Assembly: GCF_031769215.1 (NCBI RefSeq)
Contig: NW_026782393.1
Span: 434,001-498,000, forward strand
DNA: 64,000 nt
Origin: Ylistrum balloti
Lineage: Eukaryota
Direction of reading: 5' to 3'
The notes below the pieces were generated by a model. The model saw only the letters and a list, made by a program, of their open reading frames with translations, was not told the origin of the DNA and searched no databases. Positions 21,785 through 55,495 of the stretch are shown piece by piece. The translations under genes and the position numbers were made by a program. Position 1 is the first letter of the stretch; each line of letters opens with the position of its first letter.

Positions 21785-21993
21785 CTAAATCATCCTCCTG
21801 AGCAGGGGGTTAATCTGTGTGTCCCGACAGCCGAAGTCTCCACCATCGTTGTAGTGGTTGTATTTCCTTCTCCAGCCACCGTTGGGCGTGTTCATCTTAA
21901 AGTGCCACATAAAGTTTGTTGCAGCTTTGAAGTTGGGTCCGACAGTGTAGATCTCATGGATCAGATCTTCCATACAGATGATGCCATATTGAC
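21785..21993 (-). CDS. RPL7: 60S ribosomal protein L7 (uL30), exon 6
   Basis: Acceptor ttcttctgtag; (G)[68 protein letters not shown]; AATAAA at 21737-21732. Confidence 0.97.
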
Positions 21994-22528
21994 CTACAGA
22001 AGAAGAAGAAAAAACTATTTTGATGTATCTATAAGTTATTTTCAATCTGTTCTGATGTGGTCTCATGTCTTTGAGCGAGAAACTCTACCTTAATTACTTT
22101 GGTACAAATTTTTTTTTTTTTGAAGAGTCAAGGTCCATGATAAAAAAAAGTGACAACTATTATGACAAAACACTCATTTGTTGTTCTGACAAGTAGATTT
22201 TGCGGATGGACGAGTGATTTTTATTGGCGACTAGTCGGTCAGATGAGTAACTAATGAGTATCTAATAATGAAAATCACAAAAAATGTTCAGTACATCACC
22301 AGGAAAGTTTGTAACTGCCGGACACAACAAAGGAGTTTCTTGTCCAGACATGTGCTTTTCGCAAGGATATATGTTGGATCCGAGTGTTCAAATTGAACAT
22401 TCCAGATAAACTATTAGATAGCAAAATAATTTGGGATGTAAACAATAAAGAATGTCTATTAAACTCCTAAAATCTGTTTTTATTGTGGTATCCCTTCGAT
22501 ATCAATTATCACTTCTTAATTTACGTAC

Positions 22529-22638
22529 CTAATTGTTTCTCGATGATAGAGTTGTCAGTAAGTGGGATTCTCCTACCATCAACCTTGGCATAACCACGCT
22601 TGTAAACAAGCTCTTTCACACTCTTCAGGTTTGGGTAT
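22529..22638 (-). CDS. RPL7: 60S ribosomal protein L7, exon 5
   Basis: ttgtttcag acceptor, gtacgt donor; [36 protein letters not shown](G). Confidence 0.97.
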
Positions 22639-23041
22639 CTGAAACAAAAGATGATACAAATAATTGTACATCAAAACAAAAAGGATGCAATAATTTTAAA
22701 TGATATCCTCCAAAGGGCTGTACCTATGTAATTTTACATCCAGGGAAACTTTAGACAGAACTCTTTCCTAAAACTTCCTCAAACTAAATACTATAAAATT
22801 GAAATTGCTTGAATTATGTACCAAAACAATCCACATTTAAATAAAACAAGAAACCCAGTAACAAATATATATACTTTATAAACAAAACTGTGCGAGTTCT
22901 GAATGAATTTATGACATATTCAAGATATCCTTTTCTTTTCTAGGAAAAAAGGTCCATAAAGAATTTTTTTATGTAATACCATGTCCTACAAAACGATTTA
23001 CTTCTGAACAATTCAAAATTTACATCAAGCTATCAATTTTC

Positions 23042-23118
23042 TTGTTCATCCATCATAACAAAATTGAGTCATCACTTTCATTAAGAAGACATTTGGTACT
23101 AATCACGTAGATGAACAA
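23042..23118 (-). ncRNA. Intronic box C/D snoRNA candidate, copy 1
   Basis: Host-sense 77 nt: terminal stem TTGTTCATC/GATGAACAA, C=GTGATTA, D'=ATGA, C'=GTGATGA, D=ATGA. Confidence 0.7.
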
Positions 23119-23707
23119 AATGTGTTGAAGCCAAGTAACAAGGCATTCTTCCCATATATTACATCTGAAGGTCCTTCATGTGTTTCTCTGAATCTTGTTT
23201 CTAAAGTGATCAATCTACCATTTATTTTGCAATTCCTTTTAAACTTTATTGCTGAAATAATTGATCACAAAATGTACAATTCAAGTATTTTTAAAAATTC
23301 TACCAGTCCCAACCAAATTCTACAAAGACAGGACATGTAGATTTATCACAATTTCAATGCAAGAAGTTTGATTTGGAAATCTATCTACAGGAAGAAAGCA
23401 CACTAAAACTCCAGTACCCTTATCAAGTATATTTATGTAGAAAGCAAATATAATAATACCAATAATAGGTTATTTAAATTTTTTTGTGTAGGTTTGAACA
23501 TTCAACAGAAGACATATGCATTTATATATTTATAGCGAGTTTCAAAATAGTGAGTTTCAAAATATTTAAAACATGACTGTTAAAACATGCCAAAATGTTA
23601 TTATCAAACAATTCACTTTACTATTGCTGAATATATGCTGGGTCTTCATCAGATATTTGCTGGTAAATAATTTTCTCTAATATTCTCTAAGCTGTGCAAT
23701 ATTTCAA

Positions 23708-23790
23708 TGTTTGTTCATCCATCATAACGAAATTGATTCATCAGTTTCATTAAGAAGACATTTGGTGCTAATCATGTAGATGAACAAACA
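23708..23790 (-). ncRNA. Intronic box C/D snoRNA candidate, copy 2
   Basis: Same architecture with a 12-bp terminal stem TGTTTGTTCATC/GATGAACAAACA; 5 differences from copy 1 over 77 nt while the flanks are unrelated. Confidence 0.7.
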
Positions 23791-24096
23791 TGCGAACACA
23801 TAAGAAACTATATTATCAAAGGTGATCTATTAAATGAAAGAATACATCTGTTTTGCTTTCAAATCTTCAAAATGTAGTACCCACATGTGATTTGTTTTGG
23901 AAAGCCTGCTCAGACATTTTCCAAAAACGTAATGGAGCAGATAACAAGACTTTACTAGGAACGAAATAAGACAGTAAATGATCTGGAGCTTGCATGCTTT
24001 CTGACACGCATAGCCCATGTAGACTTCAATCACTAACACCTCAGCATAAGTTTTTAGTGATACTTGCAGTCTTAGCATAGGTTTTGTGATACTTAA

Positions 24097-24837
24097 AGCC
24101 CCAATATACGTAACATTCACCAAAAATTTAGTGTAGAATCACACATAATTATTGAGATATTCTCTAAGATGTAGTTAAAATTAAGTTATTCAAACAATAG
24201 TTACTATGACTTTGTGCATAAAGTATTGATATATGAGCAGTTGAAACTCACTATTTGTAAACACACCTCCATTTTAAACACCGCCATCGAAATTACGATT
24301 GTTGCCGAACCACGTCGGAAAGTTCATGACCTGATCTTGCGAGAGTTGAGGTTTCTACTTATAGAGGAAGCACATGCAGATATGTCTACGGTAAGTTTTG
24401 TTTACAAACATGGTTTGCGAAGTCTTGTCGTAGACTTGAGGTATTCCTGTGATAAACATTCAGTTTTTGGGAAATTATTAGAAGGAATAATTAGTTTAGA
24501 AACGATACGACGCACAATTATAACGTAAGAATTCAGAACTGGCCTGATGTATGATTGAAAAAAAGGAAGCGACTGGTGAACGTCTGTATTGTGTCTGCCA
24601 TGTTTACACACGCAGAATATGCGCATGCGCAATGTCATCGCTACGAGCGGTAATGTATGAACTATTGTGGGTCCCACATTGTTTATTTTCCGATTTTTTC
24701 AATTTTTATTTAAATTGAAAACAGTCAGTTTTATTTTCTTTAATTAAAGGAAAGTTTTTGTTTTGTTACATATATTACGGGGAAAATAAGATAAATTTTG
24801 TTTTTTTTTTCTAGTGATTTTTACATATATTGGGGCT
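24097..24837. mobile_element. Non-autonomous DNA transposon with TTAA target-site duplication (Kolobok-like), 741 bp
   Basis: TTAA|AGCCCCAATATACGTAA ... TTACATATATTGGGGCT|TTAA: 17-bp TIR with one mismatch, AG...CT termini, TTAA on both sides (24093-24096, 24838-24841). Confidence 0.85.
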
Positions 24838-24868
24838 TTAAATCTGTCTACAGATTTCAAACACTTAC

Positions 24869-25006
24869 CCCCATGTAATAAATGGCTCAGCAATTCTAAG
24901 CATGTTGATCGTGGCTTTGTTCAGGCGAATGAACACACCATTGTTGATCTGTCTCAAGCGGAACAACTGCATCACCTTCCTGGGTCGTGGATGGACTCCG
25001 TTGATA
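24869..25006 (-). CDS. RPL7: 60S ribosomal protein L7, exon 4
   Basis: ttttttag acceptor, gtaagt donor; [46 protein letters not shown]. Confidence 0.97.
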
Positions 25007-26308
25007 CTAAAAAAGATATTTATATTCAGATATATTTCATTGATTATTTATTTTCCATCAATAGATTATCAACAGTGATTATATTTCTTAGTTATTTGGT
25101 AATCAATATGATTCAATAATCAATAGCAACAAGTTTCTAGAACCACTGCCATCCTGACCCAAATCTTAAGGTGACATATGCAGTTTGGATCTGTCGCGTT
25201 TTGGAAATTTTTAAGACCACTATGTAAATCAGGACACTGGAAGTAACTTAAGACTTTCTATGTGGTAAGAGACTGGAGGTTTTAGAGGTTTTTGCATGTA
25301 ATTTCCTAGACTTTCTATGCGGTAAGACACCAGTTTTAGAGGCTTTTGTACATACTTTCCTAATATGATTCTTAGAGTAATTAGTTGAATATCAACAAAG
25401 TTAAGAAAAGGATGGGATTAAATACTTTATCATAGTGAAGATTACAAAAAACATGTAACAATCCCTTTCATTTTGGCCTGGTATTGCATAGGAAGTCAAC
25501 AAGATTCTTTATAAAGAAATTGCTATAACTTGACATTTATCTTATTCTAAACTAATAAAACAGTTAAACGAGGTTTTCACATGTATTTATATGTAGACCC
25601 TGTGTAGTAGTGATGGGATGATCATAATACATATAATTATTACAATATAATTACTTAACTATTTAATCTCATCTGATGCAATAATCAATTGTAGTTTTTC
25701 ATAACTGGTACCTTGCCTTAACATTTGCTTGTTTTTTTAGTAAAAACTAAATTTCTATTGTGCATAATAAAAATGCTAATTGCCAATGATATTCCTTCAT
25801 ATGTTAATTCTTGGCGAGTTATTTTTAGGTTAAGTTTTACAAAATAAAAATACTGCAAGGGGGAATACATTAATTTTCTATGAATATTGAATACACAGTT
25901 AACCGATTGTGAAATCAATTGACTACAACAAGAAATCTAGTCGATTTTAACTGGTAATCGATCAAGGATTTTCATTGATTTCCCATCACTATGATAATTT
26001 AATCAACTGATTGAATATAGTATTTATAGCTATCTATGAAATGGGCGTAATCAAAATATGTAAACAAAAATTCGAGAAATGCTTTTCTCGTGAGTGAACA
26101 ATATTCAAATTGACCCTATAATTATCAAAATTGTCGAGCAAACTCAATCAAGAAGATAAATCAACCTTTTGCAACTTAAATCAGCAGAATTTCTTGAAAC
26201 TTAATGCAACAATATTTTTTTGTTTTGGGTTGTAGATGAAATAAACATAATTGAAGCAGTGAATGGTATTGTTTGATCTTTGTACTATAAAAATGGATTA
26301 ATCTGTAC

Positions 26309-26475
26309 CCTCGTATCCTCACAACGAATGCCAGTTTGGGTTCATCAGGGACGTAGAAGTTGTTGTGTTTCCTAGCCTCTCTATGGAGACGGATGGTATC
26401 TTTCTCCATGGCCCGGTATTCTTTGATGTATTTCTCAGCTCTTTTAAAGATAGCCTGTTTCTTTGCAGCCGTTTT
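26309..26475 (-). CDS. RPL7: 60S ribosomal protein L7, exon 3
   Basis: ttttcttag acceptor, gtacag donor; KTAAKKQAIFKRAEKYIKEYRAMEKDTIRLHREARKHNNFYVPDEPKLAFVVRIRG. Confidence 0.97.
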
Positions 26476-27544
26476 CTAAGAAAATAATAAATGTAATATT
26501 TTTCACTTAAAAATATCATATGATAAAATTATATCAAGATTTTATGCACAGAAGAAATGTGTCTCAGTACAGATAATAAATAAGCAAAGATCATAAAACA
26601 AAACAGAGGTAGGCTATGCCAATTTAATGAAATGCAATTATGTAGTCTCAAGAACATTTTAGATGTCACTATTAATCCTGTATCTGATGAGAACAAAGTT
26701 ATTGATGGGATTTGTTACAACTGTCAAGATTTTGTAATGGTAGCCATCACAGAAATGTGCTGGTAACTGTGGTTGTTTGCAGCTTCTAGTTGGAAAAATG
26801 AAGTGATTATATTTTGTTGGCAACCGTCAATGGCTTTGATAAGTTGGTAGATTTAAATTCAACAGCACTTAAAAATAAAAAAAACACACAATAGAAACTA
26901 AAAAAGGTCGGCAAATTATCTTACAATTGAATTATCTTGGCAATAGTCTATTTTCTTGGGGGAATCCCTGTTCTTTCCCAACCACGAGAAACATTCTCGT
27001 TACAGGCCTTCATATCATTAATTCACCAATGCATTTTCTTTACAACCAGTCATGATTTAGGTTTCAATATGCAAGCATCGCTTGGTATTTTATATCCAAA
27101 CTCATATCAGACTACCTTCAAAACAGCCATGCAGTCTTGCTTTATGAAAGTTGTACACCACTCCCAGCAGCAAACAACATGGAGAAGGGCAAATAATTGA
27201 ATTTCTGATTGCACTGGAGGCAAATGAAAACCCAAATGCATCGATAATATAGTGTATCTCAAAAGTATTTATACTTTTTCAATGCATAATATTAAAATGG
27301 AGTCCACAAGTACCCATGTATACAATTCCTTCTCCGTCCACTCAACAGGAATGCATTTTTTTATATTCTTTCACATATAATACAGTGCCTAATGTCAATC
27401 TTTGCAAGTGTCGCTAAAATTTCATGCTTTTATAATGAGGAATTCTGCAAATCAACCAAGACAAGATAAAACACAAAAATGCACAAAGAACTATTAGTAT
27501 TCAGACTCCCTTTATGTCTCTTCAGCCCCTTTTAATCTCTTTAC

Positions 27545-27647
27545 CTTTTTGCTGAGAATAGCAGCCTTGGCCCTCTTGGCTCGAACTTCTTCATTCCTCT
27601 TCCTCTTTTTCAAGAGGGTCTCTGGCACCTGCGGAACCTTCTTTTTT
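27545..27647 (-). CDS. RPL7: 60S ribosomal protein L7, exon 2
   Basis: tttttgcag acceptor, gtaa donor; KKKVPQVPETLLKKRKRNEEVRAKRAKAAILSKK. Confidence 0.95.
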
Positions 27648-28205
27648 CTGCAAAAAGAATAAATTCTTCAAAACTGATTGGAAGATCCGATACACATTTA
27701 AATTATTATTCATTGAATTTTTTTTTTATTCATTCAGTATGTTAATTATCAGACAATCCTTAACCAGAATACATAAGTTTGTAACCCACGTATTGGACTG
27801 AAGAATATGGACTTTGTGTGTAAATCATCTATTGCCGTAATCTGTTTAAACGGTTCTGCAAGATAATGTTCACCACTACACAGAATGAAAGTTGCAGACT
27901 AATGGCAAACTACGAAAGACCATGTCAGAGAAATGTTAACACAGCGTTACTATCGAGAAATTTGAGTTATTCACGACAAAATAAAGAAGTTATATTAACA
28001 ACATTTTGATGTAGACGTCGCCATGTTGACATGACGTACAATTTTGTGACGATTATAGTACAATTATAACATGTTGAAGTAAATATACTGATAATACATG
28101 TTGTTTTAATACTGAACTGTGATGGGAAATGAGAAAAACATATAAAACTCAAGTTCTGACATGGATGATATCGGATTGAAAATGCATAGCGCTTGCTTCA
28201 CATAC

Positions 28206-28216
28206 GTTTCCGCCAT
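28206..28216 (-). CDS. RPL7: 60S ribosomal protein L7, exon 1 (coding part ATG GCG GAA AC)
   Basis: Donor gtatgt. The six exons (11+103+167+138+110+209 = 738 nt) join into an open 245-aa RPL7. Confidence 0.9.
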
Positions 28217-28507
28217 GATGGCCTATTGAAAAGGCCGCTTCAGATATTTAGCACACAAACTTCCGGTATAAGAAAACACTTATTTTGTGATAATCTTTTG
28301 ATTTTGTAACAACAAAAATTATTTTACTTAAAAAAGATTTTTCTCTTTTTCATCAATAAACTACTTCTCTGAAGAATTGTTTTTTTTTTTAATTTATTGT
28401 CAATGTTGTTAGCGAACCACTGATTTTAGGGTTAAAGGTGATAGGTCACGTTGACTTATAGGCAACAGCATGACAGGTGCGTTGAACTGTCAGTCTCAGT
28501 CGCGACG
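28217..28507. promoter_or_regulatory. Bidirectional promoter region RPL7 / RDH10-like, with TCT (5'TOP) initiator, ETS site and nuclear-receptor-like half-sites
   Basis: Only 291 nt between the divergent ATGs. Minus-strand CCTTTTC (28234-28228) fits the TCT consensus YC+1TYTYY. ACTTCCGG at 28259-28266. GGGTTA-a-AGGTGA-t-AGGTCA-cgt-TGACTT at 28429-28457. Confidence 0.8.
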
Positions 28508-28854
28508 ATGGAGAGGAAGGTAGAAAGGATGGATTCCACTGCAGACGACAGTTCTGAAACAGAAACTGTTTTAAGTATTCTGAAAGATTTGATGACATGC
28601 TTAAAGCATGTTGTAGTTGCATTGTGTGTGAGTGTATGGAGATTTTTCATTTCACCGCCAAGAAAATGTGTAAAAAATGAAATTGTACTAATCACAGGTA
28701 GCGGATCGGGGATCGGCAGACAATTAGCAGAAGAATTTGCTAAACTTGGAGCAATTCTAGTTCTTTGGGATATTCAGGAACGGACAAATTTAGAGACAGC
28801 AGAATTAGTTCGACAAGCTGGCGCACAATGTTATTGTTACATTTGCGATGTTGG
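28508..28854 (+). CDS. RDH10: SDR16C-family retinol dehydrogenase (RDH10-like), exon 1
   Basis: N-terminal hydrophobic anchor, Rossmann motif VLITGSGSGIGRQLA, LVLWDI, YICDVG|gtgagt (phase 2). Orthology within SDR16C is inferred from sequence plus the RPL7 adjacency. Confidence 0.85.
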
Positions 28855-31562
28855 GTGAGTTTTGTATATATGTAATTCCATCAGCTTGTATACGTTTAGT
28901 GTATTTGGTAGGCGAGTAGAAATGATTCCCAAACTATGCTAGAGGCCAACGTGACGAAATGTCAAGTTGTTAGCATGTCATGCCATAGTAACAGCACAGA
29001 ACAAATTGACCTGTCAACCCTCCCATGATGGTATGGTTTATTGTTCATAATTTAAACAGCCTCGCCAACCTCTAGGCATCCGATGTCTGGTATAATCAAG
29101 GGTGACGGGGAGGATGAAGTGTCATCAAAGGAAAAAATGTATAACCCACTATGTTGTATAGAGTCAGGGACGCAGATAAAGAGTATTTTGACTATAGTAG
29201 GACCAAATTGATTTGAAAATACTGATTGAAAGTTAAGAACTATAAGATTATTCTCATTTTGTTTACACAATTTAAGCATGCAGGTCATGATATGTGAATT
29301 GGCAACACTTTAAATACGCACAGGGACAGTCTGCACAATATCGCTATTTCTATGTGGGAAGGAAAATAGTTATTGTGTGGCTGAATTGGTTTTTCTGGAT
29401 ACACTCAGTTGACATTTAATGTTGAATTTTGCTCAGTTGGTAAAGCCACAGCTAAGTCTTAATTTTTCCCTGTTAGGTCACTCTGTAGGAAAAGATGTTA
29501 CCAAATTTTAAACAATTAAAAATTTCATGCAATACAATCAAAATCTTCAAAAGTGTTGTTGTAGCCCTACTTTTGAATGACTAATACCTTTTAAAAAATA
29601 CACTTTAAGTTGCTCTGTCTTGTAGACGCATTGGATATTTGAAACAATGATTGTTTGAAAAAGATATACTGTTAATTCTTTTCAAATTTGAGGCCTAGCA
29701 TTGCAAGTCTCCCTCATGCATAGAAGCATGTGTGACACTGGTGCCCAACTAAACCCCCAAATGTTGTATCAATAGCCTTTATTGTAATTTTGGGAATCTC
29801 TAGAAAAGTTAGGAATTCATCTGATTTATACTACAATATTCCCAGCTAGAAAGGCCAAAGTATGGGAGTGGACTTATTCCAGGATAATGAAATAACCAAG
29901 TGTTAGGTTTTAGGGGGAAAAGCCCCTTTCAGAAATGTAGTGGAAATAATAAATTGAGCAATCGAGGTAAACATAAATTGAGGCGTGATGAAGTGAGACA
30001 AGACTGCTAGGGGACACCAGGCTAAGGGCACAACTCAATGTTTTTTTCTTTATGAATATAGATATAGAACAGTGTATTTTGGAAGAATTTAGCTATGAGC
30101 TTAAAGATGATTGGGTTTAATAAAATAAGAACAAATTCTTTAAAATAATGTTTATTAAGGAGAAAGAGGAAAGTTTATGTAGAAAATTGGGAATTTTGGT
30201 CCAATTTTGAGAAGGGATACTCCTTTTGAGCAGAAAAATGAACCAGATTGGATTGTGATAAATAACAGTTTGTAATTTAGTTCTATTAAACAACAATAGT
30301 TATGGATGGACACAGGTGGAATCATATCAGTTAGAGCAGTAGTGGTCACATTATGGTCCATAATCCACTATTTTGCTTGACAAGTGTTGAAGTTGCATTT
30401 CAGTAAATTTTGTTCAAGAACAACTCATTTCATCACCCCATGAACTTGACCAAAGCAATTAAGATTAAATGCTTAAATGAGGTTGCTATGACCTTGACCT
30501 GACTTTGACTGCCATTACTAAAAATCTTAGCATAATACAATAGGTTTTTGGACCATATTTAAGTCACTTATTCATGTTTGGACATCAAACTTGAGAAATT
30601 GATACATTTTTGAAAAAAATTACATGAGATGGTGATGTATTGCATACTAAAATAGAGCTATGACTTCTACTTGATCTGTGACCTTGACAGTGAGAGAAGA
30701 TTTTTATCCCCTGAAATGAGAGGATTGTGTTTGAGTTCAAATGCATCACAAATACAGGGATGTGTCCCAACCTGTTTTAACTGAAATAAAAAAGATCAAA
30801 ACACCAAAAAGTAGAATGATGATAAGCAAACTGTTCACCAATAACAATTTGTTGCTGGACACAAGTAAAAATAAATGTTGACCGTTTGGATTATTTCAGG
30901 TAAGGTTCAACATGACAGATCTTTTTGCTTGAGCTAAAATTTATGTATAAGTGATAAACTGCATAGATAAAGCGGATTTTCTTACCATAACTACAACTTC
31001 TTTTAATATCTTTACATTAAAAACAACACATCAAAATTAACACAAGGAATTCGTATTGAACTGTGCATTTTTGTCATTTTGAAGTCACTTATAAATGTTG
31101 ATAATGATTAATTCAAGTTAGCAATGAATTATTCTTTATAACACAAGTTTGTGTCAGTTTATGAATATGGCCATCAGACAGCATGGGAAGCACAATGTTC
31201 TTGGAGACTCTTAGTGACAAGGGGTCTAAATCCTGAAGCAGCACCATGTAGCATGAAACAAGAGGGACATTTGTGTACATTGAGAATGCCAGGTTTAACT
31301 TGTGAGAGTTTTGGTATGCAGCCAATTCACAAAGGGAGTACTGTTCATGTACATGGGCATCTCAGTTGGTATAATTCTTTAGTCCAAAATATAGAAGTAA
31401 ATAGTTCTTGATACTTTCTGGTTTTTTGTTAAGCAATGCTCAATTTACTTAGATAAATGATCACTTAGCATACCCAGGGTACACTTGTTAAAAATGTTCT
31501 TTTTCAGTTTTTTGATACAACTCTGACATAAATTTCTAAGACTGGATTTTCTTCTCTTGTAG

Positions 31563-31728
31563 AAATCGTGATGATGTTTACAAAACAGCCAGAAGAGTGA
31601 AACAAGAAGTTGGTGATGTGACTATTTTAGTAAACAATGCAGGTGTTGTTAGTGGAAAAAAATTGATTGACATTCCCGATCATCAGATAGAAAAAACAAT
31701 CAATGTCAACCTACTGGCACATTTCTGG
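31563..31728 (+). CDS. RDH10: RDH10-like, exon 2
   Basis: cttctcttgtag acceptor; NRDDVYKTARRVKQEVGDVTILVNNAGVVSGKKLIDIPDHQIEKTINVNLLAHFW|gtaagt. Confidence 0.9.
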
Positions 31729-31885
31729 GTAAGTAAAATACCATATATTAAAATTCTGCTAATCAAGGGGAGACAAATATAAGTAAAGTGAAACACCTTC
31801 TGTTAAATTCTGTGTAACTTGGGGAGAGAAATGTTTGTAGAACAAGAATCAATGACAACTTTGGTACAAGAATCTGTTTCAATTT

Positions 31886-31961
31886 ACTGGCACATTTTTG
31901 GGTAAGTAAAATACCATATATTAAAATTCTGCTAATCAAGGGGAGACAAATATAAGTAAAG
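31886..31961 (+). repeat. Local duplication of the exon 2 3' end and splice donor (copy of ~31712-31791)
   Basis: tactggcacattt[c/t]tgggtaagtaaaataccatatattaaaattctgctaatcaaggggagacaaatataagtaaag occurs twice. Confidence 0.9.
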
Positions 31962-33639
31962 CAAGAACCCGTTTTAATTTACAGACGCATTTTGGGTAGA
32001 TTTATATACACATGTGAAAAAAGAAAAAAAAACACATGAAATAATGTTTTGTTAGTGGTAATGAAATTTAAGCAAATCAATTTATATCTTACTGGCTTGT
32101 TATTGGATAAATGAAAAATTAATTACACCATTCTGGGTAAATAGGTGAAAAAAATGTATTTAGAAATTTGTCACTAATACTGTATTGTTCTTTGTGAATG
32201 TGGCATGGTGTTATTGTTATTGTAATAAGGTTTTTTCAGCAATTGTTGTTCAGGTTTTGTTGCATTTCATTTTTCTTGCATTTTTGACACTACAGTGTAT
32301 TATTTCATTTACACAGGCAAAGATTGATGTGTAATTTTAAAATTAAAAAAAAAACCCAAAAAAGTAATGAATTAGCAGAAATATCATTAGCACTTGATAC
32401 GTTATGTTCTCACCGCAACTCAGGGTTAGTCATTGTTGTCCATTTTTTTTTGTACCAGGATATAGGTGTAATCGAGACCTATCCCTACCCTCGTTGTCGT
32501 CCAGTTTTCTGTATAATTGGTACAACAAAACCTATCTCTCTCACACCAGTGTTGTTTACAACAGTTCAAGGTCATCCTTCTTGTTTACTGAAAATAAATT
32601 TGTCGAAAGGACAGAGTATAATGGTTGTTTATAACATAGCACATCTAACACAAAGTCAGGGGATTGGTTTGTGCTTTTACAGCAATACCTACGGATAGAC
32701 CATGCATTATGTTTTTTTTTTATCATCATTCCTCGAAAGTGAAATGAATTTTAGGGTAATCAAATAAACTTTATGAATAGATGTTAATCTACTGTATTAC
32801 ATTTTCCCAGTGAAACATAGATTAAATCATTGATTTTGCAGACTAACACTAATAAAAAGGCAGAACACAAATCGTCTTATCAGATTGACAAATCATGAAG
32901 CCTTGTACAAAACAAAAAGAACTCCAGAAACCTGAAGGAGTTGTTTACTACAAACACGACCTTCAGTTCCATCTGAAGTCAGCAAACAATGCAACTAAAA
33001 TGACCTTATCAGAGATCAAACCCGATCCCCAACCCAATGTCTTGAAAGTGGAGCTAGACATTTCAAGAGGATTGCTGTCATCAATAGCGACAGCTGGGTT
33101 GCCAACATATTTTCAGGCAAATTGCAACTTGTAGCAGGTTAAACACTCAATGAACGTATTGCAGCAAATTTTGTCTGTTAGTTACATGAATAAGTAACAT
33201 TTTCTATGTGAAGTTAAAAATAAATTGACATTGAAATTGATATTTGTGTCTACATATTTTTAACAATTTAAAAAAAGGACTATATTTTGTCATGTACTGT
33301 GAAGTTATAATGAGCGAGTTGTATCTGCAAAAAGTTACGTTAGCTTTGTCCTTTTATATCTGTCCTAAAATTGCCTATAATTTGGCTATTTTGCTTGTGA
33401 AAATGTAATAATTATACTCAAGGGATAAAGAAAAGCAGGGTAAAATTTGAAGGTGATTCTAGGCAAGAAGTTGAGTGTTATGTTCAATATTTTTAAGTAA
33501 CATTGAAGATTAATTCATACAGAACAAACTGCAAAATCAACGATTTGTATCGGGTTAGTGATTCAGGAGTAACTGAAGGGAATTGAAAGAGAATTCTGTA
33601 ATCTGAAATCGAAATGAACTGATTGTAGGAGCTGGCTAG

Positions 33640-34543
33640 TCAATACCGGGTATGTCCCCCATTCGCTTTCTCCACAACCCTGATTCTCTTAGGCATGGAG
33701 TTCATGAGTGAATTTATCCTCCTCGTTGGGATGTTGGCCCATACTTCCAAGAGGGTTGGTCTCAGTTGGTCCAGAGTAACGGGGAGGCTGGCGTCGTTGA
33801 ACCTGTCTATCCAGCTGGTCCGACAAGAGCTCAATAAGGGATAGTTAGGGGTTGGAATGTGAGGTTATTTAGCTGCAGTAATGGGACAACATGGGATCGA
33901 AGGATCTCATCGCTATACCTAACGACAGTTAAATTTCCCGCTACAGCAACCAATGTTGATTTAACTCCATATGAGATTTCTCCCCACACCATATCCGATC
34001 CATCCCAAACCTATTCGTCTCTACTACGCAGCAGTCGGCAAAACATTCACTATGATGTTGGTATACATGATGTCAATGGTCTGCTCATAACAGGGTGAAC
34101 CGGAACTCATCAGTAAACAACACCCATCTCCACTGCCTTAGGGGAATATTCTGGGGGCATGTGTCACAATCCAAGCCATACAACACTGGCGATGAGCAGT
34201 GGAAGGGGGCAGACCTACAAACGAGTGACGTACCCGCAGATCAACTTCCCGCAATCATTTCTTAAAAGTTTTTGTACAGATAGGATGGTTGTGGTACGAA
34301 GGACAGATTCAATGGCAGTAAGGTGCCAATTGTGCAAATGCGCGATGTTGTGACATTGTGACATCACACGCGGACGGCCATACCTAGGTCTGTCAGCAAC
34401 CCACCCATTTTCCCTTAGACATCTAGCAAGATGTTCTATAGTGCAAATATGGACAACGAAATGTCTGGCAACTGTATTTACCTTTATCCTTGCATAATCA
34501 TTGCAATGGCCTGCCCCCTCTGAACTTTCGACAGCCGTGCCAT
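33640..34543 (-). mobile_element. Decayed Tc1-family transposase with an internal deletion
   Basis: MARLSKVQRGQAIAM...VARHF...ADRPRYGRPRV; WRWVLFTDE; VWGEISYG...GNLTVVRYSDEILRSHVVP; LIELLSDQLDRQV; C-terminal WANIPTRRINSLMNSMPKRI...ANGGHTRY*. The QDNA.PH segment is missing. Confidence 0.9.
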
Positions 34544-35179
34544 TGTTTAATGCTATCAGAAATTAATCAAAACATTGGAAAATGATGTGTCTTTATGAAT
34601 ACTACCTAACGGTATGACGAATAGTGTAACTCAATGTCACAACACTGCTGTGCATGAGATTTTCCCATTTTGTGCTTTCCTCAAAAGGCATTATCACCCA
34701 ATACAATAATGCAACGTTTAATACAGGGCCATGTGAACTGTAGCCTAGAGAGTTGCCAGACCAATTTTCATTGTTTTTAAACAATGCAAATAATGAGTAT
34801 ATAATATTTAATAGTGCCTTCAGTAATAACAAATATAGTTTTCTTGTGTCTCTAATATTTGACACACTTGCGACATATATAATTGTTATAACTAAAGACA
34901 CAATGAAATATCCTCTATGTATGCAGAATTCAATTACTATATAGCAGCGGATGTAGACATTACAAAATGGCAAGGATGCTAAAAGTAGATAAAATTCAAT
35001 CATTACTTTGGATCTATACTGTCTAGCTGACATGTTGGTAAACTGTAAACATCCACCCTCGCACACTTCTCTGGGGTCTTAATTCACTTAAGGATGTATG
35101 CAGGCTATCTCTTGTTAAAGGCCATTATAAAAGATGAGACCATTATAACAGCTTCTGTTATGAATCATCATCTGACATC

Positions 35180-35810
35180 CATTTTCAGCTAACGTGGCCG
35201 ATGGACCGCTTATGCAGCGGTGCGGCATCTGTAATCTGTCCGCCATTGTCTATCTGACTTCAACTTTTCCATTTAAGCAACTTCTGCTCAATAACAAACT
35301 GACCAAATGGCATGGTTGTGGCTGATGGCCTGCTGGGATGAAGTTTGACAAAATTTGTGAAAAGAAATAACCTTGACCCATATTCAAGGTCACATGGGTC
35401 AAATTTGTTGAAACCTTTCAATAACATCTTCTGACTAATCAAAAGTCTCAAAAGCTTTTAAAAAAAGAAATGAATCATATTCAAGGTCACAGGGGTCAGA
35501 TTATCAGAACCTATAAAAGACTCCTTCTGGTAAATGAAACTTCGGAGAAGCAGGATATTTGGTGGAAAGGTGTTTCTAGGTCAAAGCCTTCAAGAAAAAA
35601 AAATTACATTTACCTTTGATCCAAGTGATAACTGTCCCTGTTATGAGTTGAGTATTAGAAGTATTTGTTATAGAAATTGATAAGAATTGATTAGATATGC
35701 CCACTTTCAATACCCAGAATGAACATGTTATACAAGCGATAAACACTGATTCATTTTTGGTGAATATTGAATACCAGGTGAGCAATGCATGTCCTTTGGG
35801 CCTCTTTTAA
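35180..35810. mobile_element. Helentron-type HINE remnant
   Basis: gaccttgacc/caaggtcac cores and an end resembling caggtgagc...gggcctctt. Confidence 0.5.
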
Positions 35811-37740
35811 ACTCACCTTGGGATAAGGGGAAATAGATCAAAGTCTGTAAAATCCATCTCCTTGTGTAGGAATGTCAAGATAAGTTCAAATTTTCGTCTG
35901 AAGCATCCTTAAGTGAAGAAAATAAATTTTTGTATAAATGGTTGGTCTCTGCACCCGGGGTAGGGACTACTGACAAACCTATTGGAATGAAGTCCAACAG
36001 ATTACTGACATTATCATTATCGGTAGAAACCTCACCAACAGCAATGTAAATGTCAGACTCTGTACTGGAAAATCTCTGATAACAAAGCTCAGTAAAAAAA
36101 CCTTCAAGTGGCTTAAACCTTCAGCAATGGTCAGGACAAAGTGGGCCATACAGATGAAAATAACTACAGAAGAGTCATTGAAGAAGGAACCCGCTAAGAA
36201 CATCAGCAACATCAAATATGCAATACACAGCACAGTAGCTATACTTCATTTAATGCCTGTTACATCCTTATAAGGGTAAAAACTATTAAGGATGTCACAA
36301 AAATATACATATGAATTTAATTTTCTTTTTTTTTTTTAAAGACTTAAAATGACTATAATGTATAAAAACACTCTGAGAAAATGATATAAACATTCTATTT
36401 TCCAATAGTATGTTACAAAACTAAGACTTTCTGTTAATTACTAAAATTAAAAGTCACTGCAACCATTTTTTATTGATATCTAAAAAATAAAGAATTTATA
36501 TTAGACAGGAAATCGATAGATGACGAAAGATGAAGGAGGATCTTGGACTGAATATGGATTCAGAATTTGCGAAGCTGCTGCTTGACTGGTTAGCTTAACG
36601 TTAGCCCTATAATTATAACGTATCACCCTGTCATTGATTATAATCCAATATCCAGTGTTTGACGCGTGAATATGTTATGAACAACACTACTAAAAGTGTT
36701 ATCTGATAAATGTTGAATGAAAATAGGTGTGTTATTAGCTTGAATTCACAAAGATTGATTGTTAAAAATTATATATTACAACACTATAGAATCATTTACT
36801 GCAAACAAGAATTAGCAGAAAGGCGCAAAAGCAAGTGTCATACATAAGACATGTGCGTTTGTTTACACTTTCCTCGTAATCCATTTTTTCTTTGCGGCGG
36901 AAGTAAATGACTTCGTGACATGACAAGTCATGTGACCCACTAAGCTTTCTTCGTAATAAACCAAGCGTGAACATGTTTATAAACAATAGTCAAGACAAAC
37001 AATGGTTTATATATATACAAAAACAACAAATTTGACGTTATGCGTGCGTGTTTTATTATTCATTAGCCGAATTCTCCATTTCCTGATGTTGAAATCTAAG
37101 GTAATAGCTGCTTTAAAAACATCAGTGCATGTTATACATAACTTGTTCTCTATATTTGAAGCACAGAGATTGCCTGATCAAAGGTGACAGGAAAAATTTC
37201 TCTATCATCCAATACACATTGCCATTAGTTTTTCAATATACAGTCCCTAGACAGATGTTGTATGGTGTCCATTTATAAGGTGTGAAACAGAAGATATAAC
37301 GACACCGGATCAATAAAAAGGATGTTTTTTTTTCATTTTTTCATTACATAGATCCATTTATATGAATATAGATATAATATCATAAAAGCCTTGATATCGC
37401 TTATACAAAATGCTTTTTAAAATATTTCTTTATTCCTAATTGGTTTACAATGTATCACATTACAGGTAGCCATAACACTAATATAAGATATTGGGGCCTC
37501 GTTAGTACAGAAACTACCGAAACATAGAATTTATTGTTGAGGTCTAACAGTGGTGATATATTGGCACTAACAAGTGAGCAAACTTAAGGCTCCTGGTTCC
37601 AGGCTAAATATATTCAATAACAGACATTTGATATTGATATATACCCACATAAGGTGATTTTTATTGTTTAAACCAAAAAAAAAATGAACATTGAATGATG
37701 TTGTATATTGTTAAAAATGTAATGTTGTATACTGTAAAAG

Positions 37741-38003
37741 TTGTAATTTTTGAGGGACTCTTGTTTTTCATTGTTATGCTCTATACTGCAAAAGTTGTAA
37801 TTTTTGAGGGACTCTTGTTTTTCATTGTTATACTCTATACTGCAAAAGTTGTAATTTTTGAGGGACTCTTGTTTTTCATTGTTATGCTCTATACTGCAAA
37901 AGTTGTAATTTTTGAGGGACTCTTGTTTTTCATTGTTATACTCTATACTGCAAAAGTTGTAATTTTTGAGGGACTCTTGTTTTTCATTGTTATGCTCTAT
38001 ACT
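37741..38003. repeat. 54-bp minisatellite, ~5 copies
   Basis: Unit ttgtaatttttgagggactcttgtttttcattgttat[g/a]ctctatactgcaaaag; the two variants alternate. Confidence 0.95.
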
Positions 38004-38734
38004 GCAAAAGTTGTAATTTTCAAGGAGAATTGTTTTTCACCAATATGTTGTATACTGTAAAAGTTGTATTTTTCATCAATTTCGATTCAATAATTCAAAA
38101 ATTCAATAAAAACAGGTACATGTAGTATGAATTTAAACATAGCACATTTTCTAAATAGGAGATTGTTTTCATCTCATAAACCATGCTTATATTGAAATCT
38201 CCCAATATTTGCAAAGTTGTAACCAGAGCCATATCAAAGTGTTACAAAATGGCTGTTAGAAAAATTTGGTAGCCATTTTATACTGGGCAATTTTTCCATT
38301 GATTTATTCCAGTTTTTTGTGAAAACAGGTAGAATTTCAACCATCGAAAAAGAATGTATATATTTATATTTATCACATAATCTGAATGTTATCCAGTGAA
38401 CTTGCCCATTTAACATTTTTGCATATCCAGTATATGCCACTTATGTAGTATACCCTGGAACATTTTTCATTGGCTGTGTCAGTCAGAAATGTGGTGTGAT
38501 GTCATAATATGGACTATGATATGATGTTATGACTAGTATATGGCTGATCAAAATTGCTGCCTCAGTTGTCATAATGTAACTTTTCTGAGTTTTGTGATAA
38601 AAAGAATTTGGCTCTTTAAAATTGTTTTCGTTTTTTGTGAGATTTTATGAAACTCATCTTGCTTAAAGGTTGGCAAAAATAAAAACTTCAAAGACTTCTT
38701 TCATAAAATCTCAAGAAATGAAAACTCATTATGA

Positions 38735-39285
38735 TATTAAATTTATACTATCTGAAGGGAGAGCATATAGTCACCACTTTGTCAGTCCGTCCATCTGTCA
38801 GAATTTTGTCCAGAACACAACACAAAAAGATATAAGAGGTATCAACATGGATAGATCACAGCAAAGAGAAAAACAGTGCACAAGAACTATCAATCTCTTT
38901 TGCTTCATTTAGGAGTTATTGCCCTTTGTTATTTTTCATACTTAAATTTTGTCCAGAGCATTACACTAAAACGATAAGAGGTATCAACATAAATTTTGCT
39001 AGGTAGATAGATCTCTATGAGAAGGAGGACAGTGCACAAAAACTATCACTCTCTTTTGTGCAATTTAGGAGTTATTGCCCTTTGTTATTTTCATACTTAA
39101 ATTTTGTCCAGAGCATTACACTAAAACGATAAGAGGTATCAACATAAATTTTGCTAGGTAGATAGATCTCAACGAGAAGGAGGACAGTACACAAGATTCA
39201 TAACACTCTTACTGCCCTTTGTTATTTTTCATACTTAAATTTTGTCCCATTCTGGGAACATAACCTGTCTCTGATGGCCCTTGTT
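38735..39285. mobile_element. HINE-like element with ~155-bp internal tandem repeats (~3 copies)
   Basis: gtccgtccatctgtc near the left end; repeated ggagttattgccctttgttattttt...aaattttgtcc core at 38911, 39067 and ~39210. Confidence 0.7.
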
Positions 39286-39351
39286 ATATATATAAGTATA
39301 TTGATGATTTTGTTTTAGAGAGAATTATACTGACAAGTTCCCGTTTATGTT

Positions 39352-39533
39352 TACAGCGAAACCTATCTATAGAGGTCACTTAAGGGAGAAGGGAAAAGTG
39401 GCCTTTATACACAGGATGCCTATACTTATAGGTTCAATTACTATGAATCGCATTACATAGAGAGCCATCAAAGCAGGCTTTATAGACTGGTGGCCTATGT
39501 ATAAAAGTGGCCTTTAAGAGAGGTTTGACTGTA
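39352..39533. mobile_element. Tc1/mariner-superfamily MITE with TA target-site duplication
   Basis: Left end TACAGCGAAACCTATCTATAGAGGTCACTT versus the reverse complement of the right end TACAGTCAAACCTCTCTTAAAGGCCACTT. Confidence 0.8.
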
Positions 39534-39718
39534 AATATCACGGACTCCTTTATTATAACTTCCTTTCTCCTTGACAAAGTTTCCTTTATGAACTTCTCTT
39601 GAGAACTAGTATAGAATACAAGATTGTAAACATCTGAAAGACATTGTAGTCTGGGACTCTCATGAAAACCCAAGGAATTCCTAAAATACAATATATCATA
39701 TGTTTGTTTCTATTTCAG

Positions 39719-39963
39719 ACTGTCAAATCATTTCTGCCTACGATGATGAGGAGGAATCGGGGCCATGTTATAACAGTGGGAAGTTCGACTGGTTTAGTAG
39801 GACTTAATAAACTCACAGACTATAGTGCATCTAAATTTGGAGTGGTCGGCTTCTCCGAGGTGCTTAATTACGAGGTGATCTATGGCGGCTATGATGGGGT
39901 TAATACAACATTAATCTGTCCCTCGTTTGTCAATACTGGACTATTTCACGGTTGTAAAATGAA
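39719..39963 (+). CDS. RDH10: RDH10-like, exon 3 (catalytic Ser and YxxxK)
   Basis: tttctatttcag acceptor; TVKSFLPTMMRRNRGHVITVGSSTGLVGLNKLTDYSASKFGVVGFSEVLNYEVIYGGYDGVNTTLICPSFVNTGLFHGCKM(K)|gtaagt (phase 2). Confidence 0.92.
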
Positions 39964-40040
39964 GTAAGTGTTTTTATTTATTTTGGTAAAGAAATGGGAT
40001 TTTACCTGGAATTACTTCAATTTCTTAATTTCGGATGTAT

Positions 40041-40274
40041 GTTAATGCTGTATATTGTAACATATTCCTTAATTGATGACGACACAATATTTACAACATG
40101 ACAATGTTGATGAAGGAGTTAATGCTGTATATTATAACAAATTCCTTAATTGATGACAACACAATATTTACAACACGGCAATGTTGATGAAGGGGTTAAT
40201 GCTGTATATTGTAACAAATTCCTTAATTGATGACATTACTATATTTACAACACGGCAATGTTGATGAAGGAGTT
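40041..40274. repeat. 77-bp tandem repeat, 3 copies
   Basis: gttaatgctgtatatt... recurs at 40041, 40118 and 40195. Confidence 0.95.
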
Positions 40275-41049
40275 GATACATAGTCCTATCTCAAATATTA
40301 TTTTCGTCATTATGGTTTGAAATACACATTGTATAACACTTTTGTATAAACGCATATGTGTGGTATTTGTTCAATTTTCATCATCACCAACACGTTAAGA
40401 ATTGTCACTTTGATTTCTGTGACTGAATACTTCTTCAGACTTGTTACTGTAGTCATTGTCATAGAAGTGTGTAGGAGGAACACAAAAGATTTCCATTCAT
40501 ATTGAGTGACATTGACATCTATGCTGCAACCTTGTAGCCTATATAAAAAGGACAGTTTTTGAGTCATTAATATACAGAATAAATCCAACAATCTAAATTC
40601 AAGTGTCCAGCTGAATAATTTCAATCTCGAAATTCAAGGGATCGTGAAAAATAATTAGACTTATCCAAAGTTCAAAGGTTGACTTATCCTGAATTTGATT
40701 ACTGATGGATGGAATAATGGCTACGGTAGAACCCTACACCATGGTACAGTGTAATTCAATCTGTTATTTGAAAGGGCAGTAAATAAACAGAAACAAATAA
40801 GTTTCTATTTTCTCGTTTTATTGTTTCTTCATCCAAATGACAAAACATGTAACAGCAATATCAACAGCATATGAACTCACCGTCCTGCATATGTGTACAC
40901 TCAAAGCACAAATAGATCATATATTTTACGAAATGACGATAAAGCGAAATTAAAACTATGAATGAAAAACGCACTTTGTAGTTAACGTAATTCAATCTCG
41001 CATCAAGTTTTCTTTGTAAACCTTTTTCCAGCAACTGATCCAGCAATCG

Positions 41050-44017: not shown

Positions 44018-44872
44018 TGTTGGTAATAGTCATGTTTATTTAGATGTTAAATAATAGTCATGTACAAAGGCAACATCTCATCAACATACTCATATATTCA
44101 CTCCACTTCGCGTTGTGTCTCATAAAACAGTCTCTGTATCAAAACTCTCCTTGTATAAAAACAGTACTTCTAGGTATATATTAACATACCCACTCGTTAT
44201 GCTATCCATTATGGTATAACCTGTCTGTGAGCTGGTCTATGGGGCTACCTAGGGCCCATCTATTGGGGTGTCCCAACCCCTTCTCTAAGCCATCTATGAC
44301 TGTGCAGTCAGGTATCCAAACTCCTTCTCTAAGCCATCTATGACTGTGCAGTCGAGTGTTCAAACCCCTTCTCTAAGCCATCTATGACCAGGCAGTAGAG
44401 TGTTCAAACCCCTTCTGTCCTTTCCCCAGAATCTAGCTTCTATTTATCTCATCTTGACCGATTCTGTCCCGCTATCCCCTTATATGGACTTCACTTGTTG
44501 CAAGCTGATATAATTTTTGAAGTATAACCATCCACGCTCGAGGTGCGAGGTTGGGATTCCCCCTGCTTAGTTTGTAACTGGAAATAGCCCTTGACAATTA
44601 CTCTAACACCTAGTGGTCACTGTCTGAATGGGTAATTGCGTAAGTTAAATTATCAAGGAAGCTACGCCCGTTCCATCTGATAGTATAATTTACACCACAT
44701 GCTCTACAAACCCTGAGCTACTGCACTCCTCGCCTATCACCAGTAATGATTAGCCTATTTAATTGATCTACTACAGAACCATGACTTCGCTACAGTGTCT
44801 TACTTCCCAATTGTAATCCTACAATAAATTGAATAAATCAATATGTAAATATCAATACCTTATTGAGTAACA
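44018..44872. mobile_element. Possible solo-LTR-like insertion containing a 44-bp x3 repeat (44279-44415)
   Basis: TGTT...AACA termini, TATAAAA at ~44154, two AATAAA near the right end, higher GC than the flanks; no matching TSD seen. Confidence 0.3.
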
Positions 44873-49860: not shown

Positions 49861-49928
49861 AAATGAAATATGTATCATTTGATAAGAAATATTTGTGAAA
49901 TGTAATCGAGTACATAAACATGTTATAA

Positions 49929-55365: not shown

Positions 55366-55495
55366 TTACTTTATTCAAAAGATTTTTTATCTTATAATTT
55401 TTAAAAATTTATTTTTTTATTTCATACATAACAAAAATACCAAACAGCATACATACCTGCTATCACACACCAAATAATATACATGCATAAGGATG

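What the first reader, a model, noticed from the sequence alone, without database searches (positions are those of the whole stretch)
21785..39963. RPL7 head-to-head with an RDH10-like gene: the same arrangement as human 8q21
Seen: the divergent ATGs are only 291 nt apart. Known: human RPL7 (minus) and RDH10 (plus) are adjacent head-to-head on chromosome 8q21. Finding the same pair in an apparent mollusc implies microsynteny kept since the bilaterian ancestor, coupling the rate-limiting retinol-oxidation enzyme of retinoic-acid synthesis to a ribosomal-protein promoter. It also supports RDH10 orthology over SDR16C5, DHRS3 or HSD17B11.
Basis: partly seen in the sequence, partly recalled or inferred. 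Interest (0 to 1): 0.75.

Follow-up and report, generated by a model that had tools for sequence, protein, structure and literature searches.

The report
Ancient RPL7–RDH10 head-to-head gene pair
In this scallop the ribosomal protein L7 gene and an RDH10-type retinol dehydrogenase gene start 291 bases apart on opposite strands, as they do in limpet, chiton, pearl oyster, shark and human, so the pairing most likely dates back to the bilaterian ancestor and helps show that the mollusc enzyme is an RDH10 ortholog.

Summary
A complete 6-exon RPL7 gene lies on the minus strand (ATG at 28216, stop at 21785). A 5-exon SDR16C gene lies on the plus strand (ATG at 28508). Exactly 291 nt separate the two ATGs.

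Exons 4 and 5 lie about 6.8 and 8.8 kb beyond the window, so the gene spans 44 kb and encodes 341 aa.

The same head-to-head RPL7 neighbour sits next to the orthologous gene in a pearl oyster, a limpet and a chiton, and next to RDH10 in a shark. A published table lists RDH10-RPL7 as a divergent pair in human.

No RPL7 lies within 10 kb in octopus, a nemertean, two acorn worms, a lamprey or one Xenopus laevis homeolog. Two SDR16C genes that did not group with the RDH10-type clade, in starfish and Lingula, also lack it.

Protein trees put the scallop gene in a lophotrochozoan clade that groups with vertebrate RDH10. Support varies with sampling (55 to 95% bootstrap), and the rival RDHE2 grouping is only marginally rejected (AU p 0.11 and 0.037). 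Synteny therefore adds independent weight.

Verdict: this is a real, ancient, repeatedly lost gene pair of a known kind. Functional promoter coupling remains untested.

The parts
28206..28216 (-). RPL7 coding exon 1 (ATG plus 8 nt, then a GTATGT donor)
   Evidence: Read directly from the sequence. The limpet, chiton and shark RPL7 genes have the same tiny first coding exon.
27545..27647 (-). RPL7 exon 2
   Evidence: Matches Pfam Ribosomal_L30_N at E 3.3e-7, 30.9 bits, just under the curated cut-off of 31.6 for this 38-aa piece. Splice sites read.
26309..26475 (-). RPL7 exon 3
   Evidence: Open frame and GT..AG borders.
24869..25006 (-). RPL7 exon 4
   Evidence: Open frame and borders. 77-88% identical to the shark and chiton RPL7 exon by tblastn.
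22529..22638 (-). RPL7 exon 5
   Evidence: Open frame and borders. 70% identical to the shark exon.
21785..21993 (-). RPL7 exon 6 with stop codon (21785-21787)
   Evidence: Matches uL30/L7 chains of solved ribosomes, E 3.9e-34. Only one copy in the genome.
28217..28507 (.). Divergent intergenic/promoter region, 291 nt between the two ATGs. It holds a TCT/TOP-like start motif for RPL7 (C at about 28233, giving a 17-nt leader), an ETS-type CCGGAAG site at 28260-28266 and an AGGTCA half-site at 28443-28448.
   Evidence: Motifs read from the sequence. Pyrimidine-tract start motifs stand in the same place in limpet, chiton and shark. The RPL7 start site is inferred, not measured. The SDR start site is unknown. 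A contig of another individual spans the region.
28508..28854 (+). RDH10-type SDR exon 1: N-terminal hydrophobic anchor, TGxxxGxG cofactor motif and the acidic residue after beta-2
   Evidence: Pfam adh_short. 88-89% identical to residues 1-115 of the Pecten and Argopecten proteins. GTGAGT donor.
31563..31728 (+). SDR exon 2 (NNAG motif and the Asn of the catalytic tetrad)
   Evidence: Pfam adh_short. 87-93% identical to the scallop proteins. Splice borders read.
39719..39963 (+). SDR exon 3 (catalytic Ser and YxxxK)
   Evidence: Pfam adh_short, E 3.6e-16. 96% identical to the scallop proteins. Splice borders read.
39964..64000 (+). First 24 kb of SDR intron 3, which runs on past the window. 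Exons 4 and 5 are at window-equivalent 70775-70900 and 72755-72896 (L013:6775-6900 and 8755-8896). The intron holds an assembly gap at 55496-55636.
   Evidence: The own-genome search places the C-terminal exons downstream on the same contig and strand. They are colinear with residues 254-341 of the scallop proteins. The gap was left untouched.

Best explanation
The window holds the scallop's only RPL7 gene and, divergently transcribed from a start codon 291 nt away, an intact 341-aa membrane-anchored SDR16C enzyme. That enzyme belongs to the lophotrochozoan branch of the RDH10 lineage.

The head-to-head pair was inherited from the last common ancestor of protostomes and deuterostomes. Polyplacophoran, gastropod and bivalve molluscs and jawed vertebrates kept it. 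Several other lineages lost it.

Inferred mechanism of retention: the two 5' ends are so close that their promoter regions abut or overlap. RPL7 has a TCT/TOP-type start and an ETS site within 50 nt of its start. Almost any rearrangement breakpoint between the genes would damage an essential, highly expressed gene or its neighbour. The pair therefore survives where the spacer stays short, and can be broken once the spacer grows or the SDR duplicates.

Shown here: the gene models, the adjacency in five species including this scallop, and the tree position. Inferred: the start sites, promoter sharing, any co-regulation and retinol dehydrogenase activity.
For: Gene models:
- Canonical splice sites throughout, 245-aa and 341-aa products.
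- The SDR model is colinear with annotated scallop orthologs.
- TGxxxGxG, NNAG and the N-S-Y-K residues are all present.

Adjacency, head-to-head:
- Pinctada, Patella, the chiton Liolophura and the shark Heterodontus, next to RDH10.
- RPL7 exons were confirmed by tblastn in those loci.
- Human: RDH10-RPL7 is listed among divergently paired genes (PMC12672016), and the gene order is TERF1, RPL7, RDH10 (PMC3297573).

Controls: the starfish and Lingula genes, and the scallop's own E2-type paralog on another contig, have no RPL7 neighbour.

Trees:
- Vertebrate RDH10, hemichordates and a lophotrochozoan clade form one group. Support is SH-aLRT 95, FastTree 97, 94/96 and 95/97 after four long-branch rows were left out.
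- All five scallop exons, placed separately, fall inside the mollusc clade (95/84).
- In 10 alignment columns vertebrate RDH10 and the mollusc clade share a state that both E2 groups lack, and the scallop has all 10.
- Two introns shared by the starfish and Lingula genes are absent from the RDH10-type genes.

Chance estimate (inference): with roughly 2x10^4 genes, a given ortholog would have the same immediate neighbour in the same orientation in two scrambled genomes about once in 10^4 to 10^5 tries.
Against: - No RPL7 within 10 kb upstream of the RDH10-type gene in Octopus, Tubulanus, Ptychodera, Saccoglossus, lamprey or one Xenopus laevis homeolog. Ancestral retention therefore needs at least five or six independent losses or spacer expansions.
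- Deep tree support is sensitive to sampling. It drops to 55% bootstrap when a rogue nemertean row is included.
- The rival grouping with vertebrate RDHE2 is not rejected (AU p 0.111) or only marginally rejected (p 0.037). The groups tested were named after the trees had been seen.
- No RNA run was available, so start sites, co-expression and splicing in this species are unverified.
- Spacing of 1.9 kb in the chiton and about 5 kb or more in the pearl oyster argues against an obligatorily shared promoter.
- Amphioxus, sea urchin, annelid clade-A and cnidarian loci could not be examined.
Confidence: 0.8

Rival explanations
1. Convergence: RPL7 and an SDR16C gene came to lie head-to-head independently in the mollusc stem and in the vertebrate stem, by chance or because ribosomal-protein promoters tolerate or attract divergent neighbours.
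For: The linkage is missing within 10 kb in all sampled lineages that branch between molluscs and gnathostomes: nemertean, two hemichordates and lamprey. It is also missing in octopus.
Against: The same two orthologs stand in the same orientation with the same exon-1-to-exon-1 geometry in four molluscs and a shark. The chance expectation for one specific pair is about 1e-4 or less (inference). Hundreds of other ancient 5'-5' pairs are known to survive with patchy loss (PMC3514665). Hemichordates have tandemly duplicated the gene, and cephalopod genomes are known to be reorganised (PMC9023564, listed). Both explain loss.
Confidence: 0.05
2. The scallop gene is not a one-to-one RDH10 ortholog. 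It is either RDHE2/SDR16C5-like, as NCBI names its relatives, or it descends from the undivided RDH10/RDHE2 ancestor. In that case RPL7 linkage is ancestral to the wider SDR16C subfamily and says nothing specific about RDH10.
For: NCBI names the mollusc orthologs 'epidermal retinol dehydrogenase 2-like'. Raw identity to vertebrate RDHE2 (44-50%) is no lower than to RDH10 (42-46%). AU tests give p 0.111 and 0.037. The backbone is a polytomy in the 70-row careful tree.
Against: Molluscs, an annelid and scallops themselves each have two deep paralogs. One falls in the clade with RDH10 and one in a separate E2-type clade. Every tree topology obtained joins the first clade to vertebrate RDH10. Among the vertebrate loci examined, RPL7 was seen only next to RDH10, and no vertebrate RDHE2 locus was examined. 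Shared derived residues and intron pattern also favour RDH10. The higher identity to RDHE2 is explained by the long stem branch of vertebrate RDH10 (0.5-0.6 changes per site).
Confidence: 0.12
3. Functional coupling: the pair is kept because a truly shared bidirectional promoter gives the retinol dehydrogenase a housekeeping or maternal baseline of expression tied to ribosome biogenesis.
For: Only 291 nt separate the ATGs in scallop, 435 in shark and 888 in limpet. An ETS-type site, common in bidirectional promoters (general knowledge), stands between the genes. Conserved 5'-5' pairs are enriched for short spacers and co-expression (PMC3514665). One Xenopus rdh10 homeolog is strongly maternal (PMC8834563).
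Against: No expression data for this locus. Spacers of 1.9 kb (chiton) and about 5 kb or more (pearl oyster). Many lineages separated the genes without losing either. Vertebrate RDH10 is spatially restricted and RA-regulated whereas RPL7 is ubiquitous (general knowledge).
Confidence: 0.25

Closest known systems
Human/vertebrate RPL7-RDH10 divergent gene pair (8q21.11)
   Same: Same two orthologs, same head-to-head orientation and sub-kilobase spacing. The shark has 435 nt ATG to ATG. The human pair is listed among divergently paired genes.
   Different: The scallop protein lacks the vertebrate-specific insert after the second beta-strand region, and its gene has 5 rather than 6 coding exons. 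Its third intron is 30.8 kb long.
Conserved ancestral microsyntenic pairs (CAMPs) of Irimia et al. 2012, e.g. HSPE1-HSPD1
   Same: An unrelated gene pair kept adjacent across protostomes and deuterostomes, 5'-5' orientation, short intergenic distance, patchy loss.
   Different: I could not see whether RPL7-RDH10 is in their list, because the supplement is not held. No co-expression evidence exists here, unlike HSPE1-HSPD1.
Mollusc RDH10 studied functionally (Tritia ToRDH10, bioRxiv 10.64898/2025.12.01.691671)
   Same: A mollusc SDR16C gene assigned to RDH10 and tied to retinoic-acid-like phenotypes. Presumably the same clade as the scallop gene.
   Different: That sequence was not compared here, and the passages I read do not mention synteny.
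Epidermal retinol dehydrogenase 2 (RDHE2/SDR16C5)
   Same: Same SDR16C fold and motifs, 44-50% identity, and the name database pipelines give to the mollusc proteins.
   Different: The scallop has a separate E2-type paralog on another contig. The window's gene groups with RDH10 in every tree and carries the RPL7 neighbour, which the starfish and Lingula loci examined lack.

Membership tests
Ribosomal protein L7 / uL30 (cytosolic) | Ribosomal_L30_N plus L30 domains, full-length protein of about 245 aa | tested here: met
   Exon 2 matches Ribosomal_L30_N just under the curated cut-off for this 38-aa piece (30.9 vs 31.6 bits). Exon 6 matches L7/uL30 chains of solved ribosomes, E 3.9e-34. The model is 245 aa.
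Ribosomal protein L7 / uL30 (cytosolic) | Ribosomal-protein-type promoter (pyrimidine-tract TCT/TOP start, very short leader) and single functional copy | tested here: inconclusive
   The motif and a 17-nt inferred leader are present, and the same layout is seen in limpet, chiton and shark. The last exon is single copy. The start site itself was not measured because no RNA run was found.
SDR16C family of classical short-chain dehydrogenases | TGxxxGxG, NNAG, catalytic Asn-Ser-Tyr-Lys and an N-terminal membrane anchor | tested here: met
   All motifs can be read in exons 1-3. Pfam adh_short matches each exon. The nearest relatives are all SDR16C proteins.
RDH10 (SDR16C4) orthology group | Groups with vertebrate RDH10 to the exclusion of RDHE2/SDR16C5/6 and HSD17B11/13 in a phylogeny | tested here: inconclusive
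   Every tree joins the clade to RDH10. Support is 94/96, 95/97 and SH-aLRT 95, but 55/94 with a rogue row. The AU test of the RDHE2 alternative gives p 0.111 and 0.037. DHRS3 was not in the trees.
RDH10 (SDR16C4) orthology group | Conserved genomic neighbourhood with vertebrate RDH10 (RPL7 head-to-head) | tested here: met
   Scallop window, Pinctada, Patella, chiton and shark RDH10. Absent at the starfish and Lingula loci.
RDH10 (SDR16C4) orthology group | NAD+-dependent all-trans-retinol dehydrogenase activity | not testable with these tools
   The acidic residue after beta-2 fits NAD(H) preference, but this is inference from the sequence. An enzyme assay is needed.
Conserved ancestral microsyntenic pair (Irimia et al. 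2012) | Orthologous pair adjacent in both protostome and deuterostome genomes, orientation conserved | tested here: met
   Four molluscs including this scallop, a shark, and human from the literature, all 5'-5'.
Bidirectional promoter pair | Divergent start sites less than 1 kb apart | tested here: met
   291 nt between the ATGs bounds the distance between start sites.
Bidirectional promoter pair | Shared regulatory elements or correlated expression | not testable with these tools
   No RNA run holds the locus. The only run found is DNA contigs.

The most novel reading that the evidence does not exclude
The RPL7-RDH10 divergent pair is a bilaterian-wide regulatory unit. A ribosomal-protein-type bidirectional promoter supplies a constitutive or maternal floor of retinol-oxidising capacity. 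Lineages that broke the pair (cephalopods, hemichordates, lampreys) rewired RDH10 control. If so, the 291-nt scallop spacer would be a minimal natural bidirectional promoter linking growth state to retinoid metabolism.
Probability: 0.2. Interest if true: 0.6.

Novelty: new member of a known kind. Interest (0 to 1): 0.42.

Why it matters
The linkage gives a sequence-independent anchor for calling the mollusc, nemertean and annelid clade RDH10 orthologs. Databases currently label them 'epidermal retinol dehydrogenase 2-like'. This matters for arguments about how old the retinoic-acid synthesis pathway is outside chordates. It also adds a clean, easily testable example to the set of ancient 5'-5' gene pairs: a housekeeping ribosomal gene next to a developmental-metabolic enzyme, with natural variation in spacer length from 0.3 to about 5 kb or more and several independent break-ups to compare.

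Tried and rejected
- RNA evidence: the run search found no RNA run. The single run found is low-coverage DNA contigs, useful only to confirm contiguity.
- Rfam at gathering threshold found nothing in the window.
- The hemichordate homolog search was swamped by bird RDHE2 clusters. It gave no amphioxus, sea-urchin or cnidarian RDH10 candidates, so those lineages could not be surveyed.
The Owenia clade-A gene (P0398), found late, could not be examined.
- The supplement of Irimia et al. 2012 is not held. The supplements of the 49-genome microsynteny paper do not name either gene.
- A tblastn hit of the C-terminal guide at 63829-63894 was rejected as chance. The real exons 4 and 5 lie downstream of the window.
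- The pearl-oyster RPL7 annotation (297 aa, no pyrimidine-tract start) looks wrong at its 5' end, so its 4994-nt spacer is only a rough figure.
- The AGGTCA half-site near the SDR start was considered as a retinoid response element. It is left as a note, because a single hexamer is expected by chance.
Exons were used one by one by reference. Full-length placement used database proteins of two other scallops.
- No contig taken for human was met, and the N gap was left untouched.
Full report
**What is in the sequence**

The minus strand carries a complete RPL7 gene.
- Coding exons: 28216-28206, 27647-27545, 26475-26309, 25006-24869, 22638-22529 and 21993-21785.
- All introns are GT..AG, and the CDS is 738 nt, 245 aa.
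- Exon 2 matches Pfam Ribosomal_L30_N at E 3.3e-7 (30.9 bits, just under the curated cut-off of 31.6 for this 38-aa piece).
- The last exon matches 60S L7/uL30 chains of solved ribosomes with E down to 3.9e-34.
- The last exon occurs only once in the 649-Mb assembly.
- Seventeen bases upstream of the ATG there is a pyrimidine-tract TCT/TOP-like start motif. A CCGGAAG ETS-type site stands some 30 nt further up.

- Exons in the window: 28508-28854, 31563-31728 and 39719-39963. Each matches Pfam adh_short.
- They carry TGxxxGxG, NNAG and the Asn-Ser-Tyr-Lys residues.

**Correction to the coordinates**

The gene does not end at 39963. A search of the window's own genome with a clam ortholog (P0004) found the C-terminal exons on the same contig and strand, beyond the window. 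I fetched that stretch as L013.
- Exon 4 is L013:6775-6900 and exon 5 is L013:8755-8896, all with canonical splice sites.
- The CDS is 1026 nt, 341 aa, and the gene spans 44.4 kb with a 30.8-kb third intron.
- Exon by exon, the model is colinear with the annotated 341-aa proteins of Pecten maximus (P0393) and Argopecten irradians (P0392) at 72-97% identity. The residues I predicted across the three split codons match them.
- This validates the model and shows the window comes from a third scallop species.
- A DNA contig from another individual bridges 28115-29082, so the junction between the two genes is not an assembly error.

Exons were used separately by reference.

**Is the arrangement shared?**

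I looked at the genomic surroundings of twelve relatives. The flank was 10 kb, genes were as called in the public records, and I checked for uncalled RPL7 exons with tblastn.

| Species | Gene type | RPL7 head-to-head upstream? | ATG-to-ATG spacing |
|---|---|---|---|
| Pearl oyster Pinctada | RDH10-type | yes | about 5 kb or more (RPL7 5' end poorly annotated) |
| Limpet Patella | RDH10-type | yes | 888 nt |
| Chiton Liolophura | RDH10-type | yes | 1918 nt |
| Horn shark Heterodontus | RDH10 | yes | 435 nt |
| Octopus | RDH10-type | none within 10 kb | - |
| Nemertean Tubulanus | RDH10-type | none within 10 kb | - |
| Ptychodera | RDH10-type, tandem duplicates | none within 10 kb | - |
| Saccoglossus | RDH10-type, tandem duplicates | none within 10 kb | - |
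| Lamprey | RDH10 | none within 10 kb | - |
| Xenopus laevis, one homeolog | RDH10 | none within 10 kb | - |
| Starfish Asterias | outside the RDH10-type clade | no, unrelated neighbours | - |
| Lingula | E2-type | no, unrelated neighbours | - |

- Limpet, chiton and shark all show the same tiny first coding exon and a pyrimidine-tract start.
- For human, a published table lists RDH10-RPL7 among divergently paired genes (PMC12672016, Table S8). GWAS papers give the order TERF1, RPL7, RDH10 on 8q21.11 (PMC3297573 and PMC7385356).

**Orthology**

Database pipelines call the mollusc proteins 'epidermal retinol dehydrogenase 2-like'. Trees say otherwise, but not overwhelmingly.
- Lophotrochozoans have two deep paralog clades. 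The scallop has one of each: the window's gene, and an E2-type gene on contig C26 that is 82% identical to an oyster E2-type protein.
- The window's clade contains molluscs, the nemertean Tubulanus and the annelid Owenia P0398. It joins vertebrate RDH10 and a hemichordate clade in every analysis.

| Analysis | Support for the joint RDH10-type clade |
|---|---|
| Quick tree, 70 rows | SH-aLRT 95 |
| FastTree, 91 rows | 97 |
| Careful tree, 65 rows, five scallop exons as separate rows | 94/96 |
| Careful tree, 70 rows, rogue long-branch nemertean (Lineus) falls inside the group | 55/94 |
| Careful tree, 66 rows | 95/97 |

- In the 65-row tree all five exons fall inside the mollusc clade (95/84).
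- The 66-row tree leaves out four long-branch rows: P0227, P0362, P0053 and P0119.
- Forcing the clade together with vertebrate RDHE2/SDR16C5/6 costs 23.1 lnL (AU p 0.111). On the cleaned set with full-length scallop proteins it costs 17.3 lnL (p 0.037). These groups were named after the trees had been seen.
- Ten alignment columns carry a state shared by vertebrate RDH10 and the mollusc clade but not by either E2 group. The scallop has all ten.
- The starfish and Lingula genes share two introns that RDH10-type genes lack.
- The literature already accepts invertebrate RDH10 orthologs in amphioxus (PMC3184775) and Platynereis (PMC5821490). A snail RDH10 knock-down has been reported (bioRxiv 10.64898/2025.12.01.691671).

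Sequence evidence therefore leans towards RDH10 but is sensitive to sampling.

**Interpretation**

If gene order were scrambled independently, one specific ortholog would have the same immediate neighbour in the same orientation about once in 10^4 to 10^5 tries (inference). Hundreds of other ancient 5'-5' pairs are known to persist with patchy loss (PMC3514665). I therefore read the pair as inherited from the bilaterian ancestor (confidence about 0.8). It was kept in at least three mollusc classes and in jawed vertebrates, and broken or stretched in cephalopods, a nemertean, hemichordates and lamprey.

The likeliest reason for persistence is mechanical. With abutting promoters there is almost no neutral place for a breakpoint next to an essential gene. 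Real co-regulation is possible but untested. The spacer varies from 0.3 kb to several kb, and no RNA data were available.

**Novelty and limits**

I found no paper that reports this pair outside vertebrates. The pair list of Irimia et al. is not held, so I could not check it. The finding is a new, well-supported member of a known class of conserved gene pairs, of moderate interest. It is useful mainly as an orthology anchor for RDH10 in lophotrochozoans.

Noticed in passing
window 33640-33992 (minus strand): Two adjoining open frames in SDR intron 2 read like the C-terminal part of a Tc1/mariner-type transposase. Probably a decayed transposon copy.
   Followed up: no
window 37695-38060: A 121-aa open frame made of a repeated unit of about 18 residues, that is, a minisatellite of about 54 nt inside SDR intron 2.
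   Followed up: no
window 55496-55636: A run of 141 N (assembly gap or masked stretch) inside SDR intron 3. Left untouched.
   Followed up: no
G000:C26:421181-424945 (loci L002, L007): The scallop's second SDR16C gene, of the E2 (RDHE2-like) type, 82% identical over one exon to an oyster E2-type protein. It lies on a different contig from the single RPL7 locus.
   Followed up: partly
L022:984-2432 (chiton Liolophura, RPL7 gene): The C-terminal two thirds of RPL7 exon 4 is repeated about ten times at 145-bp spacing next to the real exon. This looks like a tandem array derived from an exon.
   Followed up: no
L015:5007-10000 (Pinctada intergenic region): The spacer between RPL7 and the SDR is several kb and holds an AGGTCA-rich tandem repeat. 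The annotated 297-aa RPL7 has a doubtful 5' end with no pyrimidine-tract start.
   Followed up: partly
L018:3126-5769 and L026:1-8645: Hemichordates carry tandem arrays of the RDH10-type gene (at least nine paralogs in Glandiceps on one chromosome). This may be how the RPL7 linkage was lost there.
   Followed up: partly
window 28443-28448: A single AGGTCA nuclear-receptor half-site about 60 nt upstream of the SDR start codon, with imperfect half-sites nearby. One hexamer is expected by chance.
   Followed up: no
The Rfam search of the whole window at gathering threshold found no family match.
   Followed up: partly
proteins P0151-P0171, P0392, P0393: Public annotation names the whole mollusc RDH10-type clade 'epidermal retinol dehydrogenase 2-like' or 'SDR16C6-like'. 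Tree and synteny suggest that these names point to the wrong vertebrate paralog.
   Followed up: yes
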